NCBI GenBank assembly: GCA_028023455.1
Contig: JAQFVV010000003.1
Coordinates: forward strand, 28,582,001-28,646,000
Source: Epiperipatus broadwayi
Taxonomy: Eukaryota > Animalia > Onychophora
Direction of reading: 5' to 3'
DNA length: 64,000 bases
How positions within the stretch are numbered: position 1 is the stretch's first letter; the number at the start of each line of letters is the position of its first letter. This document shows positions 47,061 to 55,210 of this stretch, piece after piece. The notes beneath the pieces were generated by a model that saw only the letters and a list, made by a program, of their open reading frames with translations, was not told the origin of the DNA and did no database searches. Made by a program: the position numbers and the translations under genes.

Positions 47061-47838
47061 AAATGATTTTGTATCTTTTATTAGGAAGAATCTTTTTTTT
47101 TTATATAGAAAAATTGAATTAAAGGTAATTGGAATGTAATTGAGAATTATAAAAAAGTATTTTATTATATATTTGTGTTTTGTTTGTACTTGAGACTTCT
47201 GTCTTGGTAATGAAAATAGTGACTGAAATTTTAACTTTGGCTAGTTTTTTATAATTTTGAATTTAATATAATTTATTTAACAGATACACTGAAACCGACC
47301 AAAATATTCAAGTCGAATAATTCAATATGAAAAATATGAGAAAGGAAGAACTTTTATTCTTTAGCAGAAAAGTAACCGTATTCCTTCCAAATTTGAAAAA
47401 CAATTCAACATAATGATACAAAATATTTTTAAAATTAATATTATTAATTATAAAATTGCTAATTAGAGCATTCATTATTTTTAAATTCTGTTGTTTTTTT
47501 TTTTAATTTAAAAAATAATGTACGCTGAATCAAAATGATTTTAATAAATAATGATTTGTAAATATGATTATTTGAAGAAACTGTATTTTAATACATAACT
47601 ACAATATAGGTTTTTTTTCATCATATGCACAAATCAAATTATATCAAATCTTGTACATGGGCTATTTATGTGAGATGGAACTGCCTATATATATTTAATT
47701 ATTACTAGTATTTTCATATAAAATTATCATAAATACAAATAAACAGTTTTTAAACAATTTATTTAAACAATAAGCAACTTCAACAAATTTATAAATATTA
47801 AATAAATGATAAATACTCAAAACCATAAGAAGTAAATA

Positions 47839-49067
47839 CCGTATTTCTCACCTTATAAAACATGTTGGCATATAAGATGCATCCACCATTTAACAAAAAT
47901 TATGTAAGTTCTTTGCCTGAAGACAAAGCCAGACATCAAGGTAATTCTAATCAAGTTAGTAATAGATTTGAGCATGACTGGCAGGAATTTTACCATTGCT
48001 TAATCATCATTTAAAACAAAAATTGGAAGAACTAAGATTCTACCAAACTATCTTCTGTTTCATTCAATTTTTTTAAGAAAATGTTTTATTGCATGAATTG
48101 TATTAATTTTTTTTTTTAAAGAAAAACATTATACTAAACATATATTCAATTTTTATAAATGGTATTAACTATCTTACCCCATGACACCAAAATTCATGGA
48201 AAAACATTATAACTTAATATAAGTTTTGACTATTCAAGTCCTCTAACCAAATGTCATTACCCAAATCACCTTCTTTTTCTATCCTATTCTTTATCATCAT
48301 AGTTTCAATATCAGACTTCTTATTATCAAGATATAATACAATACTTTTCTATATAAAAACTATTTAGACGAAAAACTTATCATTTTTAACTACAACTAAT
48401 AATTTAATTGATTATATCTTTTACATACTCTTACTTTCTTCTAAAACCTTTATAAAACTCTATTTCCTTCAAAGTATATGCCCATTACAGTCTTTTTCTT
48501 TTCTATTTATTTTTCAATTATCAAAAATGAATGATTAGAAAGAAATCTACTCTCTTATCTTTTTCAATATTTCATTACTTCTAATTTATCAGCTCTCTCG
48601 CCAAATGTCTAAAACTCTATATAAATTGCCAAATTTCAAAATAAATACTTTACTAGACATTTATTTTAAAAATTTGATTCACAAAATAAATTTCTTTGAC
48701 TGCAAATCTAGAGTTTCTTAAATATTCATACATCTATTCTTATTTTGAATAGTTCAATATAGACTGTAAGTTTTTTCTTTCAAAGTTAACATCATGATGC
48801 TTTTTCAAAAATATTTAATATCTCTTTATAAAATTTATCATTTCCAAAGAAGACCTTATCACTAGTTAGCCAAATGTATCGAAATTACTCTCCTGATTTA
48901 ATATTTTTCAACTAAATTATAATAATAATTTCATAGAACAGTAAGTAAAAGGAAGAATTTTTCATTTTTGCCATTGTCTTGTAAAATGCAATTACTTTTT
49001 TTTTTAAAAAAAAAGTACAGATTTTTGAAGCAGGAGGGGCATATGCTTTATTTGGAAAAAAATACGG
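47839..49067. mobile_element. Possible Tc2/Tigger-type element ends
   Basis: TA|CCGTATTTCTCACCTTATAA ... TTATTTGGAAAAAAATACGG|TG. The TIR match is short, so the two ends may not belong together. Confidence 0.3.
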
Positions 49068-49146
49068 TGTTTTTCAATAACAATTGTTTTTAATTATCAA
49101 AAATAAAGCTTTCAATATGTAAAATAAAAAAAGGATTTAAAATCAA

Positions 49147-49980
49147 TTAGGCTGAAGATGGAATACTTATTAAATGGAGTTGAGGAATAGGAAGAGGCTG
49201 AGTATAACCACTCGCACAAGTTGAATCTTCAAAAGCTATGCTGTAAAATCCATCTACTTCCTGAGGTTGTTTAATTACCATCCCTGGATAAAAACAAGTG
49301 GTTTGAGGATATATAGCATAAACCCTGGCACCACAAGGAAACAAAATGTCTGGATGGGTGTCAGGATTAACTTTAAATTTTGGTAGTGGAATAACTTTAC
49401 TTTTCTTAATTGTGTATTGTTCTCCACCATCAATATCTTCAACATTATATTTCCCAGTAGTTGGGTTATAATTTGTTACTTCTCCCAGAAGCCAATTTAT
49501 TTCACTGTCTTCATTCACTGTCTTAAATGCTACTTTGTCTCCTTCATATGCAATATAATTATCACTTTCTGATACAATTCCACAAAGATATGGCACTTTG
49601 TCAATAGAATCCTTCCAAACAGGTAACATTTGAGCTTCCTTTTGTAATCGCTGAATAAGAAGGCCTGCATGACGAACTAACTTATCAGTTTTTTGTGAAT
49701 CTTTATACTGACATTCAGGAGAATTATTTTTATACTTTTTCTTGTCTAGTTTAAGAATTCGTAATGTACATAATGCATGCTCCAAAGCCTTAATTTCTTT
49801 TTGTGTATTTTGAAGAATCTCTTCAGCTATCAATTTAATTTTAATTCTCCTTTCATTTTCACAAATTTTATTAAAACCTGAAGATGACAGAGTTTCTTCC
49901 ATCTGCTGGAGATTGATATTTATGTTATCTCTTATGGATTGAGTTTCACGCACAGTTTTATACAAATCACTTAGATTTTC
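49147..49980 (-). CDS. SGF29: SAGA-associated factor 29-like protein (coiled-coil plus tandem Tudor), main and terminal exon of 277 codons
   Basis: Acceptor CTTTTTATAG at 49981 opens phase 0 (ENLSDLYKTVRETQ). LPVW...PYLCG, GDKVA, WLLGEV, KYNVEDID, VIPLPKFKVNP, YAIYPQTTCFYP and IAFED...GY align with SGF29 family motifs. The frame is intact. Confidence 0.92.
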   Translation of the reverse strand, partial: ENLSDLYKTVRETQSIRDNININLQQMEETLSSSGFNKICENERRIKIKLIAEEILQNTQKEIKALEHALCTLRILKLDKKKYKNNSPECQYKDSQKTDKLVRHAGLLIQRLQKEAQMLPVWKDSIDKVPYLCGIVSESDNYIAYEGDKVAFKTVNEDSEINWLLGEVTNYNPTTGKYNVEDIDGGEQYTIKKSKVIPLPKFKVNPDTHPDILFPCGARVYAIYPQTTCFYPGMVIKQPQEVDGFYSIAFEDSTCASGYTQPLPIPQLHLISIPSSA

Positions 49981-51209
49981 CTATAAAAAGAAAATATACA
50001 TAGTTATTAATTCTAAAAAAAAATACAAATTTATCTACTGTTACTATAAAAATTTATTTATAAAATTTAAAAGAAAAGCAATTTATGAAAAGTATTATTA
50101 CAACTTTCACTAATTAGGAATCAAAAGCCTAACCTACATTTGATGTCTTTAATTTCCAATAATATTTATAAATAATATACATCAAGTGACAAAGAGTTCT
50201 CCGATTCAAAATAAAATTTATAATAATGGAAAATTGTAAATACTTAATGTTCGAAAAATATTAAGGCATTACCTACAATAGATTAAAAGATTTATTTTAT
50301 TATAATATATAAAAAATCCTATAGAGAACACATTAACATGCATACAAATTTAATGATAGCATTACTTCCTTTGATATATGGTATACTTATTAAATACTTG
50401 GCACTTGAAATAAGAGGTTAAATTTATAACCCTATTTAACAATTTTTCTTCTCCCTTCATATAAAAAACAAAAGAAAAAATTCAAACTTTCTTCGAAATG
50501 AAATTTATATAAGAAAAAAATATTGCATGAGTATATATTGTGAAACATTTTGTTAAGTTGTGGTAGGCCTTCTTTTACACACTATAAAGTGAAAAATAAT
50601 CAAGCTATGATGAAGAAAAATATATTGTTCCTATTTCCAAAAACATAGCTATATTTCCTGATTAACTGGCCTACTGATTATTATGACCTACACTGCCCGC
50701 GGAATCATTTTTATTTATTTTAATAAAGGCATCAGAATTCGCTGACCTGTCGCATTGCACCACACACTGTAATTTAAAAGGAAATTTATTACAAAGATCA
50801 GGGTCTAAATTTATTGTTATTTTAAGGATCTTTATGAATCTTTTCCGGGGTTAAACTATTAAATATAACGGCAAAGGTAATTTCTTCAATTAAATATTAA
50901 TAAACTAACATTAACATCTAATATTCAAATTAAGAATGTACAAAGAGAGTGCTAAATTAATACTAAATATTTTATTAAAATCTATTTAAAATATTTAAAC
51001 AAGAATTAGTAAAGAAAAAATTGGAAAAAACAACAACATACACTAATCCAAATATTATTAATCAGATGAAAAGTTCTTGTTACATTTAAATTCTTCTAGC
51101 TAGTTCCTTGAAACATTGAAAATCAGTATCTATCGGTATTATCATTCATGGCTAATGTTAATTGGCAACAATTAAAGTCACAAATTGGGAGTAAATAATC
51201 TTAACTTAC

Positions 51210-51486
51210 CGATAAGCTTGTATCAGTTCTTGTAATATACTTGTCTTCCTTTGGGATCCCGTGCTCCTTGAAATTTAATTGATCTCTCCTGCTCGCATCT
51301 TCACATTCCTGGTCCAATCCATATCTGGAGCAAGAAGCTCGGTTGCGATGACCTCTTCATTACAAAAGACGGTGTTCACAAGGTTTTGTTTCCATTCTTG
51401 CAGGACGACTTCGTTCAGCAAGTGAGTAGAGTTCCTGTGCAGACGCATTTCACTGCAACAGGTCACTCTCACGAAAACTTCCAACT
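51210..51486 (-). other. Candidate 277-nt upstream exon of the SGF29-like gene (non-coding or uORF-bearing)
   Basis: Acceptor TGTGTTTTTAG and donor TCG|GTAAGT, with raised GC. The frame continuous with SGF29 has TAA TGA mid-exon and no ATG after them. Confidence 0.5.
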
Positions 51487-52218
51487 CTAAAAACACATAA
51501 CTAGAAGATAAAAGAAAGAACTAGATCGAAGTTGTCCTCTTCTTTTTATACTTCGATCCAGTTTTGAAACATCTGTGCATGTTATTATTATCATGACCTT
51601 AGGTTTATAATCTTATACATTTATTTTCTTTTTCTAGTATAAAGTTCTTTTTTTAATAAATTATTTCTGCCATCTTTAATCAATATCCTAAAGGTTTTCT
51701 TGATCGTAATCTTTGTACTTTTGAAATTCTTTTTGCTTATTTGGATTAGTAATCTGCATGCCTTTTTCATTCTTTCCAATTTTAACTTTTATTAAATTAC
51801 AAATAAATAATTCGAAACAAAAAAATCAACTCTCATTGTACATTTAAAAAAAAAAAAAAAAATTCTACTTTTTTTTTTTTAGCTTTTAAGTATTTTCAAA
51901 TGCCAATATATTTGGACCATCTATTTGTAGACAGTACAATTGTAAGAAGTGATCCATACATCCCAACAAGAACCATTAAACACCCTTATTTATTTTAACA
52001 TCAACACCCACCATAACAACATTCCTGATATCTAATGTACCATAAGTTATATATATAAAGAGAATGTAATCCAATTAAAATGTATTCCCGAAAACAAAAA
52101 TGTTAACAAACATTTTAGATAAGAAAATACTTAATTGTTTATATAATTAAAAGGCAAACAAACGTGATAAAATCCATAACCCAAACTAAACATGTAAAAC
52201 TTAAATATTTATACTTAC

Positions 52219-52239
52219 CCTTAGTACAAAGCCTTTCAT
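52219..52239 (-). CDS. Candidate first coding segment MKGFVLR of the SGF29-like gene
   Basis: ATG AAA GGC TTT GTA CTA AGG|GTAAGTAT; a phase-0 donor matching the 49980 acceptor that supplies about the number of residues missing from the N-terminus. Confidence 0.4.
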
Positions 52240-52699
52240 GAACTATTGTTTGATATACTTACATTATAACAATATAAGAAAAAAGATGATCACATTTAGA
52301 TGCAAGCAATAAAATCGTAAAAAAAAAAACATAAAGGAAGAAAATAATAAATAAATTTTGCGATTACTAATCCATCAAAGATATATATAACCTGTAACAT
52401 ATGATGTAAATAAGCAAGTCCATGCTTGATATCAAAGTTACTATTTTAAAAGCATCAATTCAACACTTAAAAAGAATGACCTCATTTTGGTGATTGGCAG
52501 TATATATATACAAACGACTTTTCATTTCAAGGATTTGATAAAAAACTCTTGCTGACTTATCAACACATGTATTTTGGAAGTGGCAATCAAACCTGGCATT
52601 TGGGGACAAAGGTTGGCATTCACCAAAACAATACTTCAAGCTATAAAATTCCATTAAAGATGGATAAGAACTAAAATAAAAACCGATGGATTTGAATAA

Positions 52700-53030
52700 G
52701 GAATTTTAAATTAGAAATTCCAGAACTATAAATTTATTTGGCATTTCACAAATCTCTGGCCAGAGAGTTATACCAACCCTAACTTGAGATTTCAAGAGAA
52801 CATCTAACCGTTCAACAAACTCAAGGACTCTAATTAACTACTTAGGTAGATATACATACCATCATGCACAGTTATGTACAAAGTTACCTCATGAGAAGAG
52901 ATTTGTCAGCCATGAAACTGTAACCACCAAAATCGAATTCAACTCGAATTAGCATCTATCCACTTATGATGAAGGTGACACCAAACTTTACTACTTGGAT
53001 CTGAAGATGTGAATTTAACAATTCAAAATT
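52700..53030 (+). mobile_element. Possible Penelope-like 3' remnant with a decayed hammerhead
   Basis: Weak RFQEH-like and LELASIH peptides, followed by CTGAAGA TG TGAATT-TAAC-AATTCA AAA, which lacks the CG of CGAAA. Confidence 0.3.
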
Positions 53031-53419
53031 TACTACATGGGAAAAGAAATTTCGATTACCATTATGCACTCCAAGACATTTGAACCAAACTAATTGGATT
53101 TATCGGTAATCATCTGAAATCCGGGCACGGCCGCTTGGGGCGTTGATGCTATACAAAAATCAATCAAATATAACGTTAACGGGCCGCCACAACTTTTTTT
53201 TTATACATGTTTTTTTTTTTTGATTAAACAAATTTTTTATTTCATTTACAACATTTCTTTTTTATTAAACAAATTTTTATATTCATTTTCGTTGTTTTTT
53301 TTTTAACCTGATATTTTTCTTTATCCAACAAATTTTGGTCATTTAATTTTAATTAAAACTTTGCACTGTTTCACGACCAAAAAACTTGTTTTAACCACGC
53401 CAAAAAAATATAATGGGAT

Positions 53420-54110
53420 AAATTATTTGGGACTTGTTTCAACTTTGTTCTACCTTTTTTTTTTTTGCTTGACTAAATTGTTTTTCTTCTTCTTATTAAA
53501 TCAAAACTAACTTTTGTGTTGTTGGGGGTTCAAAAATTGTTTTGAAATCCCCCACCCTCGAATCAATAATTGTAACATAAAGTCAATAATTTTACTTTTT
53601 TTTAAACAACTTGTTTTCACTTTTTACTTTTATTTATATTTCGTTTGAATTAGCCTTTTTTTTTTTTTGCTTCTACAGTAAACAGTTTTTTTTTTTTTTG
53701 GGGGGGGGGGCTTTCGTACTGTTATTCTTAACAAAAAGTCAACAAAAATAGTCATTTATTTGAACCCCACTTGTTTTAACCCTAATGAAAAAATAGAATG
53801 CTATTATTTGGTATTATTTCGAATTTATTCAACCTTTTTTTTTGGCTTGACCAAATTGTTTTTCTTCTTATTAAATAAAAAGTAACTTTTGTGTTTTTTG
53901 GGGGATAAAAAATGGTTTTAAAACCCCAACCCTCACGCTCGGAAAAAGAATTGTAACAAAAAGTCAATAATTTACCTTTTTTTTTTTTTCAACAACTTTT
54001 TCGCACTTTTTACTTTAATTTATATTTCGTTTGAATTACCTTTTTATTTTTATTTTTTGCCATTCTACAATAAACTGCTTTGGGGGGGGGGGTTTCGTAC
54101 TTTGTTATTA
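53420..54110. repeat. Two-unit tandem repeat (unit about 380 bp) inside the CGGT-TIR element
   Basis: GCTTGAC-AAATTGTTTTTCTTCTT...CCCTC...TTGTAACA-AAAGTCAATAATTT...TTCGTTTGAATT...GGGG-TTTCGTACT occurs twice. The second unit resumes at 55211 after the MITE. Confidence 0.75.
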
Positions 54111-55210
54111 CACCTGGGTCTCTTTTTACGCGGACTTATTTAACACGATTTTGAAGTTACGCGATTCGTGTTTCACCGGAAGTGTGTTAAATAAGTCCGC
54201 GTAAAGAGACCCACGTGTATGAACTCCGATAATGCGCTATTACTTTAAATAATAAATTTTGCGCACTTATATTATATTGAAAGTAATAGCACATTATTGG
54301 AATTCGACTTTCATCTTAGTAATTTCAATATTTTCAGTGCTTAATAATAGTAAGATTTTATGCAATAATGAAATTAGAATCATAATTTCCACATTTTACG
54401 TATACACACATTAAATTTTACAAGATTATAATGTAAATTTGTTCAAACATTGTACGTGTTAATTTTGCATTTTAAATCACATTCTGTTTTTGCTTTTTAA
54501 AAAAGAACGTAATCAATTATTAATCATTTAGTGTCCACAAGTTTATTTTTAAAAGGTCAATAATAGCAGTGGGGATAATTAAATTTGACAATTAAAAATT
54601 AAAATCTGATTTTTAATTGTAATTAACAATTTAAAAATTACTTACTGCGACTTGAAATTAATGTGAAATTTGATTTTTAAACCGAATTGAAAATTAAAGA
54701 CAAAAATAAGAATTTAATTTTTAGTTGTTAGTTTCATAAACAATTAATAAAATCATCGTCTCAAAGATTAATTACTAATTACGTTGTCACCAGAAAACCA
54801 CTGTTACAACACGAGTGTGAAGTTGGCGCTAGTTGTTTGCAAACGAACGTGTCTTTCAGCAAATAGCTATAATAATTAAAACGTGTATAAAAAATGTCAA
54901 TTACTGTACTGTAAATTATGCATAAAAATATATTATTTTGAATAAAATTAAATATTATAGTTAAAAAAAGTTTGTCTTGTATCATTTTTTTTTAAATTTG
55001 AAATTTTTTATTAGTCATATTTTATTTCCTTATATTTTTTTTGCGCGAATTTTAAAGTAATTTTACGTTGGTGCTTTGCTTTTACGCGAATTTTGAAAAA
55101 TCACAGACCGCATCCCCCCTTTTTCAATGTAAGTTACATCTATTTTTGCGCGATTTCGTTTGCGCGTGTTTTCTGAGGAACCTATATATCGCGTAAAACG
55201 AGACCAGGTG
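54111..55210 (+). mobile_element. Tigger/pogo-like MITE, related subfamily, with an internal inverted copy of its left end
   Basis: TA|CACCTGGGTCTC ... GAGACCAGGTG|TA; boundaries confirmed by comparison with the uninterrupted first repeat unit. The extra inverted TIR ends at 54217. Confidence 0.8.

What the first reader, a model, noticed from the sequence alone, without database searches (positions are those of the whole stretch)
49147..49980. Divergent, nearly intronless SGF29-like gene with the H3K4me3-reader residues intact
Seen: 277 uninterrupted codons in a window where TE ORFs are all broken. The N-terminal half is far from the SGF29 sequences I recall and the basic C-terminal tail is replaced by ISIPSSA. 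Yet the acidic motif for H3 Ala1 (EDID; human D194/D196) and the K4me3 cage (YPQTTCFY and FED; human Y238, Y245, F264, D266) are retained. Inference: a retroposed or duplicated paralog under purifying selection on the Tudor pockets, possibly forming an alternative SAGA/ATAC module (for example in germline) or acting as a competing reader. It could also be the sole, fast-evolving ortholog.
Basis: partly seen in the sequence, partly recalled or inferred. Interest (0 to 1): 0.7.

Follow-up and report, generated by a model that had tools for sequence, protein, structure and literature searches.

The report
Expressed SGF29 retrogene beside canonical gene
This arthropod-type genome carries, besides its normal nine-exon SGF29 gene, an old, fast-evolved, RNA-derived extra copy that is transcribed, spliced and still keeps the pocket that reads the histone mark H3K4me3: an ordinary kind of new gene, though not reported before for this protein in the literature I could search.

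Summary
A 277-codon open frame lies on the minus strand at 49147-49980. It is the longest in the window (next 163 codons; chance about 3e-11). It is a clear SGF29: Pfam 1.8e-28, human SGF29 structure 7.8e-42, model TM 0.93.

It is not the sole ortholog. A canonical nine-exon SGF29 spans 76 kb on contig C20 and is about 75% identical to tick and vertebrate SGF29. The window copy is 31-43% identical to any SGF29. All eight canonical intron positions fall inside its single coding exon, so it is a retrocopy.

An RNA contig from a sister species splices a 1,229-nt GT-AG intron from 51209 to 49981. The upstream exon lies in a repeat with more than 900 candidate copies.

Constraint is indicated by several results:
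- 33 of 39 family-conserved columns are kept.
- The three visible differences from another species are all synonymous.
- The coding region has higher GC than its flanks.
- A decayed daughter pseudogene on C21 has lost conserved residues that the window copy keeps.

Open points: the start codon (no in-frame ATG in exon 1; first ATG is codon 27), tissue, binding partners and age. The find is a lineage-specific retrogene of moderate interest.

The parts
49147..49980 (-). Coding part of exon 2. It holds 277 sense codons plus the TAA stop at 49149-49147. It encodes three N-terminal helices (aa 2-117) and the SGF29 tandem Tudor domain (aa about 118-272).
49900..49902 (-). First in-frame ATG, at codon 27 of the open frame. 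It is the most likely start if exon 1 is non-coding, giving a 251-aa product.
   Evidence: Sequence. There is no in-frame ATG in exon 1.
49981..51209 (-). 5' intron of 1,229 nt, with donor GTAAGT at 51209-51204 and a polypyrimidine tract plus AG at 49982-49981. It does not sit at any canonical SGF29 intron position.
   Evidence: The spliced contig of run X6 joins 49979/80 to 51209/10, skipping 1229 nt. The ends read CT..AC on the plus strand, which is GT..AG on the minus strand. Sequence.
51210..51399 (-). Exon 1. Its 3' end at 51210 is firm. Its 5' end is unknown: at least 30 nt are seen in the spliced contig, and it may reach about 51399. In the frame of exon 2 it is open for 49 codons but has no ATG. 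Several out-of-frame ATGs lie further upstream.
50545..51944 (-). Interspersed repeat of about 1.4 kb. It supplies exon 1, the splice donor and the first 665 nt or so of the intron. The genome search gave 922 or more first-look candidates, and the 40 that were scored are 86-91% identical.
47742..49146 (-). 3' UTR of about 1.4 kb, with AATAAA at 47763-47758 and the mRNA end near 47742. A possible proximal signal (AATAAA at 49052-47) and a T9A10 run at 49014-48996 could be a remnant of the original retrocopy tail. That reading is inconclusive.
   Evidence: The daughter retrocopy on C21 is colinear from 49419 to 47742 and then continues as A7. Sequence.

Best explanation
This is a functional retrogene, a lineage-specific second SGF29.

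Shown or strongly indicated:
- A processed mRNA of the canonical nine-exon SGF29 gene, now on contig C20, was reverse-transcribed and inserted here long ago.
- The copy lost the parental start and the first 23 or so codons.
- It gained a new 5' exon, a splice donor and probably its promoter from a 1.4-kb interspersed repeat upstream, which created one new 1,229-nt intron.
- It is transcribed and spliced in several related species.

Inferred:
- The product is 251 aa if translation starts at Met27, or longer if an unseen upstream coding exon exists.
- It has a rewired helical N-terminal half and a well-preserved tandem Tudor domain.
- Through D182/D184 (H3 Ala1 pocket) and Y224/Y231/F250/D252 (K4me2/3 cage) it should bind the H3K4me2/3 tail as canonical SGF29 does.

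Not known:
- Whether it still enters GCN5 acetyltransferase modules through ADA3 or acts alone as a competitor or adaptor.
For: Parent and retroposition:
- The own-genome search finds one full-length copy, the window, plus a multi-exon gene on C20.
- C20 has nine exons with an ATG, GT-AG borders and consistent phases.
- Its exon peptides are about 75% identical to tick and vertebrate SGF29.
- All eight parental intron positions map to window aa 14, 38, 63, 85-94, 128, 188, 217 and 242, inside one exon.

Age and rate:
- The UTRs show no similarity to C20.
- The best of 1.84 billion representatives is 36-49% identical.
- The terminal branch is 1.47, against 0.17-0.24 for canonical sequences.

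Expression:
- The X6 contig (depth 84) crosses a GT..AG joint. X5 gives 601 nt with no differences, and X11 gives 630 nt at 97% identity.
- A 5'-truncated daughter retrocopy with an A-tail on C21 shows germline transcription and marks the mRNA 3' end.

Constraint:
- P(open frame by chance) is about 3e-11.
- 33 of 39 columns conserved at 80% or more are kept.
- The 3 visible coding differences from organism D are all synonymous.
- GC is 33% in the coding region and 23.5% in the intron and UTR.
- The C21 pseudogene has a stop at P200 and has lost P225, C229, P239 and Y259. The window keeps all of them.

Fold:
- pLDDT is 91, with TM 0.92-0.94 and rmsd 1.4-1.9 A to human SGF29 bound to H3K4me3.
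Against: - No in-frame ATG precedes codon 27 in exon 1, so the N-terminus is unresolved. Upstream out-of-frame ATGs could hamper translation.
- There is no protein-level evidence.
- RNA coverage is uneven. In X5 and X6 the 5' part of the exon is deep and the Tudor part nearly uncovered. In X11 the pattern is reversed.
- The runs are only guessed to be RNA. The spliced joint is one contig with a 30-nt side.
- Selection rests on three visible substitutions and a pseudogene comparison, not on a codon-model test.
- Coding-region divergence from C21 (6.7%) is only a little lower than UTR divergence (8.1%).
- No clear poly(A) tail or target-site duplication of the original insertion survives.
Confidence: 0.8

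Rival explanations
1. It is a functional retrogene that no longer belongs to SAGA/ATAC. With its N-terminal helices diverged, and perhaps truncated at Met27, and its basic tail lost, it would act as a free H3K4me3 reader that competes with canonical SGF29 or recruits other partners.
For: - The N-terminal half shares little with other SGF29 sequences. Only the Tudor columns are conserved.
- The parental start is lost.
- The tail ISIPSSA replaces ACKDNRKK.
- The terminal branch is very long.
Against: - AlphaFold still predicts three long helices with high confidence, as in canonical SGF29.
- SGF29 N-termini are poorly conserved across species anyway (PMC8053100), so divergence alone does not show loss of ADA3 binding.
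- Nothing was tested directly.
Confidence: 0.3
2. It is a transcribed processed pseudogene, or a non-coding RNA, whose frame is open by chance or because it is young.
For: - There is no start codon at the head of the frame.
- Exon 1 is repeat-derived and carries upstream ATGs.
- RNA coverage is uneven.
Against: - The copy is old: the UTRs are unalignable and it is about 35-50% identical to its parent. A neutral frame of 277 codons has P about 3e-11.
- Conserved residues and a raised GC content are retained.
- Its own daughter copy on C21 decayed over about 8% divergence while the window copy kept the conserved residues.
Confidence: 0.06
3. It is a DNA-level duplicate, segmental or from a whole-genome event, that later lost all its introns.
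For: - No poly(A) tail or target-site duplication of the founding insertion is recognisable.
- The placement in the tree is unresolved, so an old duplication cannot be excluded.
Against: - Eight introns are missing at once, precisely. The only intron present is at a non-parental position and is built from a repeat.
- Retroposition is demonstrably active on this very gene, as the C21 copy shows.
Confidence: 0.05
4. It is the only, fast-evolving SGF29 ortholog of this animal.
For: None after testing.
Against: An intact-looking canonical nine-exon SGF29 lies at C20:2709261-2785720.
Confidence: 0.01

Closest known systems
Canonical animal SGF29 (human SGF29/CCDC101; PDB 3ME9, 3MEA, 3MET)
   Same: - It has a tandem Tudor domain with the same fold: TM 0.93 and 42% identity.
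- The H3A1 acidic pair and the Y/Y/F/D K4me3 half-cage are present.
- The N-terminal half is helical.
   Different: - It has a single coding exon where the canonical gene has nine.
- It is 31-43% identical overall to any SGF29, whereas this genome's own canonical copy is about 75% identical to tick and vertebrate SGF29.
- The parental start and first 23 or so codons are lost.
- The basic C-terminal tail is replaced.
- Two near-invariant positions have changed: A152F and L223I.
Retrogenes that gained 5' exons and promoters (Carelli et al. 2016, PMC4772013)
   Same: - The coding body is intronless and derives from a spliced parental mRNA.
- A new upstream exon and intron were recruited from nearby sequence.
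- The copy has been selectively preserved (for the general pattern).
   Different: - The exon and donor here come from an interspersed repeat in an arthropod-type genome.
- Tissue specificity is unknown, so the 'out of testis' pattern could not be checked.
The two plant SGF29 paralogs, SGF29a and SGF29b in Arabidopsis (from my own knowledge, not checked here)
   Same: Two SGF29 genes are present in one genome.
   Different: To my knowledge the plant pair are ordinary multi-exon duplicates and are not a retrogene pair.

Membership tests
SGF29 (Pfam PF07039, SGF29_Tudor) | Profile match above the curated threshold | tested here: met
   99.7 bits against a cut-off of 23.8, E 1.8e-28, aa 147-258.
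SGF29 (Pfam PF07039, SGF29_Tudor) | Tandem Tudor fold as in solved SGF29 structures | tested here: met
   AlphaFold2 model with pLDDT 91. Foldseek against 3me9, 3mev and 3met gives E about 1e-20, TM(target) 0.92-0.94 and rmsd 1.4-1.9 A.
SGF29 (Pfam PF07039, SGF29_Tudor) | K4me2/3 half-cage Y238, Y245, F264, D266 (human numbering; PMC4589357) | tested here: met
   Y224, Y231, F250 and D252 align to them.
SGF29 (Pfam PF07039, SGF29_Tudor) | Acidic H3 Ala1 pocket (human D194, D196). The residue numbers come from my recollection of Bian et al. 2011, which is not held. PMC4589357 confirms only that the pocket exists. | tested here: met
   D182 and D184 align to chain positions 81 and 83, which are 194 and 196. 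D182 is conserved in 98% of homologs.
SGF29 (Pfam PF07039, SGF29_Tudor) | Helical N-terminal half that anchors the protein in the GCN5-ADA2-ADA3 module | tested here: inconclusive
   Helices are predicted at aa 2-32, 41-86 and 92-117. The sequence is diverged, the start is uncertain and no binding test was possible.
SGF29 (Pfam PF07039, SGF29_Tudor) | Binding of H3K4me2/3 and membership of SAGA/ATAC | not testable with these tools
   Needs peptide binding assays and affinity purification.
Processed retrogene | Lacks the parent's introns, and an intron-bearing parent exists elsewhere | tested here: met
   The nine-exon parent lies on C20. Eight intron positions map inside the single window exon.
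Processed retrogene | Poly(A) remnant and target-site duplication of the founding insertion | tested here: inconclusive
   There is only a T9A10 run 42 nt after an AATAAA at 49052-47, and no duplication was seen. The UTR cannot be aligned to the parent's.
Processed retrogene | Transcribed | tested here: met
   A spliced GT..AG joint, plus contigs in the three runs that cover the exon, from three organisms. A daughter retrocopy of its mRNA lies on C21.
Processed retrogene | Purifying selection on the coding sequence | tested here: inconclusive
   The evidence points towards selection. No codon-model dN/dS could be computed, because orthologous sequences were not retrievable.

The most novel reading that the evidence does not exclude
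A lineage-specific second SGF29 has uncoupled H3K4me3 reading from the canonical acetyltransferase module. With a rebuilt or truncated N-terminus and no basic tail, it would compete with SAGA/ATAC for H3K4me3 promoters or deliver a different partner there, perhaps in a restricted tissue such as the germline.
Probability: 0.25. Interest if true: 0.55.

Novelty: new member of a known kind. Interest (0 to 1): 0.35.

Why it matters
SGF29 is normally a single-copy bridge between the H3K4me3 mark and GCN5 acetylation in animal SAGA and ATAC. A second, strongly diverged copy keeps only the histone-reading pocket under visible constraint. That makes it a natural separation-of-function experiment: it shows which parts of SGF29 are needed for reading and which for joining the complex.

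It is also a clean arthropod-type example of the retrogene life history. The steps are loss of the parental start, capture of a repeat-derived exon and donor, a long 3' UTR, and a further daughter pseudogene. As a class, though, functional retrogenes of chromatin proteins are well known.

Tried and rejected
- Sole-ortholog reading: rejected, because the canonical gene is on C20.
- Apparent alternative isoform in run X6. It showed as a loose end at 49740 with an in-frame ATG. The loose letters are an RPL28 exon on contig C12749, and a low-complexity stretch was mis-laid. It is not an isoform.
- Naming the organism. COX1 nuclear copies show the invertebrate mitochondrial code. A search with a stop-free COX1 piece returned only unnamed metagenomic fragments. 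The atlas and cluster look-ups gave no taxon.
- Dating by tree. The window protein sits on a long branch with no supported neighbours.
- Search for close orthologues. Neither the word-based search nor the exhaustive one found any. The sister-species transcripts seen are not in those protein libraries, so no dN/dS could be computed.
- Remnant of the parental 5' coding part inside the intron: none found.
- Similarity of the 3' UTR to the parent's: none found.
- Rfam on the window: no hit.
- Literature: no paper on an SGF29 retrogene was found. Bian et al. 2011 is not held.
- Joined protein model. Exons were compared one at a time, and only exon 6 went into the tree.
- Complex prediction with ADA3 was not attempted, because ADA3 would need a joined multi-exon model.

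Full report
**Observation.** On the minus strand, window 49980-49150 reads as 277 sense codons, followed by TAA at 49149-49147. The plus strand is broken by stops. This is the longest stop-free stretch in any frame of the 64-kb window; the next is 163 codons. At the window's base composition (73% A+T, stop probability 0.083 per codon) a frame of 277 open codons has a chance of about 3e-11.

The protein matches Pfam SGF29_Tudor at 99.7 bits (cut-off 23.8). It matches human SGF29 chains 3me9 and 3mea at E 7.8e-42. In that alignment the chain numbering is offset by 113 from the human protein. This reproduces the published cage Y238/Y245/F264/D266 (PMC4589357). The window residues at those places are Y224, Y231, F250 and D252. 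The acidic pair at human 194/196 is D182/D184, within EDID. The C-terminus is ISIPSSA, not a basic tail.

**Gene structure.** The frame has no ATG at its head. It begins directly after ttttctttttatAG, a textbook acceptor. Laying contigs of four small runs on window 48500-54499 gave several results:
- Run X6 (a sister organism) has a 474-nt contig, depth 84, that covers 49536-49979 and then jumps 1,229 nt to 51209/10. The skipped ends read CT..AC on the plus strand, which is GT..AG on the gene's strand.
- Run X5 (the same organism code as the DNA runs) has a 601-nt piece with no differences.
- Run X11 (another organism) has 630 nt at 97% identity across the Tudor-coding part and the start of the 3' UTR.

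The donor is GTAAGT at 51209-51204. The gene therefore has at least two exons and is transcribed in several related species. The runs are only guessed to be RNA, but a GT-AG joint is hard to explain otherwise.

**Start codon.** In the frame of exon 2, exon 1 stays open for 49 codons but holds no ATG. Other frames hold ATGs followed by stops. The first in-frame ATG is codon 27 (49902-49900), which would give 251 aa. The 26 codons before it still resemble the parental N-terminus: LSDLYKTVRETQ against LQELYQLIQQTQ. An unseen upstream coding exon therefore cannot be excluded. The X5 contig carries 59 letters that did not lie on the 6-kb stretch and could be such an exon. This point stays open.

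**Origin of exon 1.** Exon 1, the donor and the first 665 nt or so of the intron lie inside a 1.4-kb interspersed repeat at about 51944-50545. The own-genome search returned 922 first-look candidates, and the 40 that were scored are 86-91% identical. The retrocopy thus borrowed its 5' exon, and probably its promoter, from a mobile element. Exon gain of this kind is a frequent step in retrogene evolution (Carelli et al. 2016, PMC4772013).

**The parent gene.** Searching the window's own 5.6-Gb assembly with the protein, with an outside SGF29 and with the Pfam model found one full-length copy (the window). It also found a series of short matches in order on contig C20. Exon-by-exon comparison resolves nine coding exons from 2709261 to 2785720 (76 kb). 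They begin with MRRAKS...QQTQ and end with ...VVACKDNRKK-stop. Inspection of the printed borders shows GT-AG boundaries and consistent phases. These exon peptides are about 75% identical to SGF29 of a tick and of vertebrates. The window protein is only 31-43% identical to any SGF29.

Mapping the parental exon borders through the family alignment puts all eight introns inside the window's single coding exon, at aa 14, 38, 63, 85-94, 128, 188, 217 and 242. The window's only intron lies upstream of all of them, at a non-parental place. Precise loss of eight introns at once is the signature of retroposition.

**Age and rate.**
- No similarity remains between the 3' UTRs.
- Nucleotide similarity survives only in parts of the Tudor exons.
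- No remnant of the parental first 23 codons lies upstream of the acceptor.
- An exhaustive search of 1.84 billion cluster representatives found 554 SGF29 relatives, none more than 49% identical.
- In a tree of 58 rows the window protein has a terminal branch of 1.47 substitutions per site, against 0.17-0.24 for the tick protein and exon 6 of C20. It has no supported neighbours.

The copy is therefore old, fast-evolved or both. Its age cannot be fixed here.

**Evidence for constraint.**
1. An old copy with an open frame of P about 3e-11.
2. Of 39 alignment columns conserved in at least 80% of 56 homologs, 33 are unchanged. These include the whole YPQTTCFY motif, the PLP motif and both pockets.
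3. The three coding differences from organism D that the reads tool listed, at 49213, 49249 and 49300, are all synonymous third-position changes. The contig has 15 differences in 535 coding bases and 4 in 95 UTR bases.
4. The coding region has 33% G+C, while its intron and 3' UTR have 23.5%.
5. There is an internal control. Contig C21 holds a 5'-truncated copy colinear with window 49419-47742. It runs from mid-CDS through 1.4 kb of 3' UTR and ends 16 nt after an AATAAA, where it continues as AAAAAAA. That is a processed pseudogene made from this gene's own mRNA. It shows germline transcription and marks the mRNA 3' end near 47742. Over the shared 270 coding bases the two differ at 18 sites. 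The C21 copy has a stop at P200 and has lost P225, C229, P239 and Y259, residues present in 30-56 of the roughly 52-56 homologs. The window copy keeps every one.

This is good qualitative evidence, but it is not a dN/dS test.

**Structure.** With the 57-row alignment AlphaFold2 gives mean pLDDT 91. It predicts three long helices at aa 2-32, 41-86 and 92-117, followed by the two Tudor barrels. Foldseek places the model on human SGF29 bound to H3K4me3 with TM 0.92-0.94 and rmsd 1.4-1.9 A.

**Mechanism.** The following are shown:
- SGF29 family membership
- the fold
- the binding residues
- the retrocopy origin
- transcription and splicing
- the repeat-derived exon

The following are inferred:
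- translation from Met27 or upstream
- binding of H3K4me2/3 through the conserved pockets

Still unknown is whether the diverged N-terminal helices bind ADA3. If they do, the protein would make an alternative SAGA/ATAC acetyltransferase module. If not, it would be a free reader. Tissue of expression could not be learned, because the run records are coded.

**Oddities.** In X5 and X6 the 5' part of the exon is much deeper than the Tudor part, and in X11 the reverse holds. I have no explanation beyond contig fragmentation. A suspected alternative 5' exon in X6 proved to be an RPL28 mRNA mis-laid on a low-complexity stretch.

**Novelty.** Full-text searches found no report of an SGF29 retrogene. 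The SAGA review lists paralogs for ADA2, several TAFs and ATXN7 but none for SGF29 (PMC7528701). Retrogenes of transcription factors may therefore be common here. Overall this is a new member of a well-known kind and of moderate interest.

Noticed in passing
G000:C21:1484885-1486771 (L011:4885-6771): A 5'-truncated processed pseudogene made from the window gene's own mRNA. It is about 90% identical, has a TAA at the P200 codon, carries a 210-bp insertion and ends in A7 just after the AATAAA.
   Followed up: yes
G000:C430:35643-35877 (L012:5644-5877): An older fragment of the same retrogene lineage. It is about 80% identical in nucleotides over 241 nt, covers window 49343-49103 and has frameshifts and a TGA.
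   Followed up: partly
window 53100-54500: RNA contig depth runs into the thousands in runs X5 and X6, with many small joints around 54176-54257. This looks like a very highly expressed repeat or small RNA-like element. Rfam finds nothing at gathering threshold.
   Followed up: no
window 50545-51944: An interspersed repeat of about 1.4 kb with at least 900 candidate copies in the genome at 86-91% identity. It holds a 73-codon ORF (51496-51275, minus strand). Its family was not identified.
   Followed up: partly
G000, many contigs (for example C2:8155834-8157171, L020): At least 62 nuclear fragments of mitochondrial COX1, several of them near full length. TGA sits at Trp positions and AGA/AGG at Ser positions, which indicates the invertebrate mitochondrial code.
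   Followed up: partly
window 49381-49981, run X5 contig of 660 nt: This contig carries 59 letters that did not lie anywhere on window 48500-54499. They may be an alternative first exon outside the stretch that was laid.
   Followed up: no
G000:C12749:787010-787039 (L027): An RPL28 exon ending ...GAVMVFKTKK. Its A-rich end resembles window 49740-49710 closely enough to be mis-laid there by the reads tool.
   Followed up: yes
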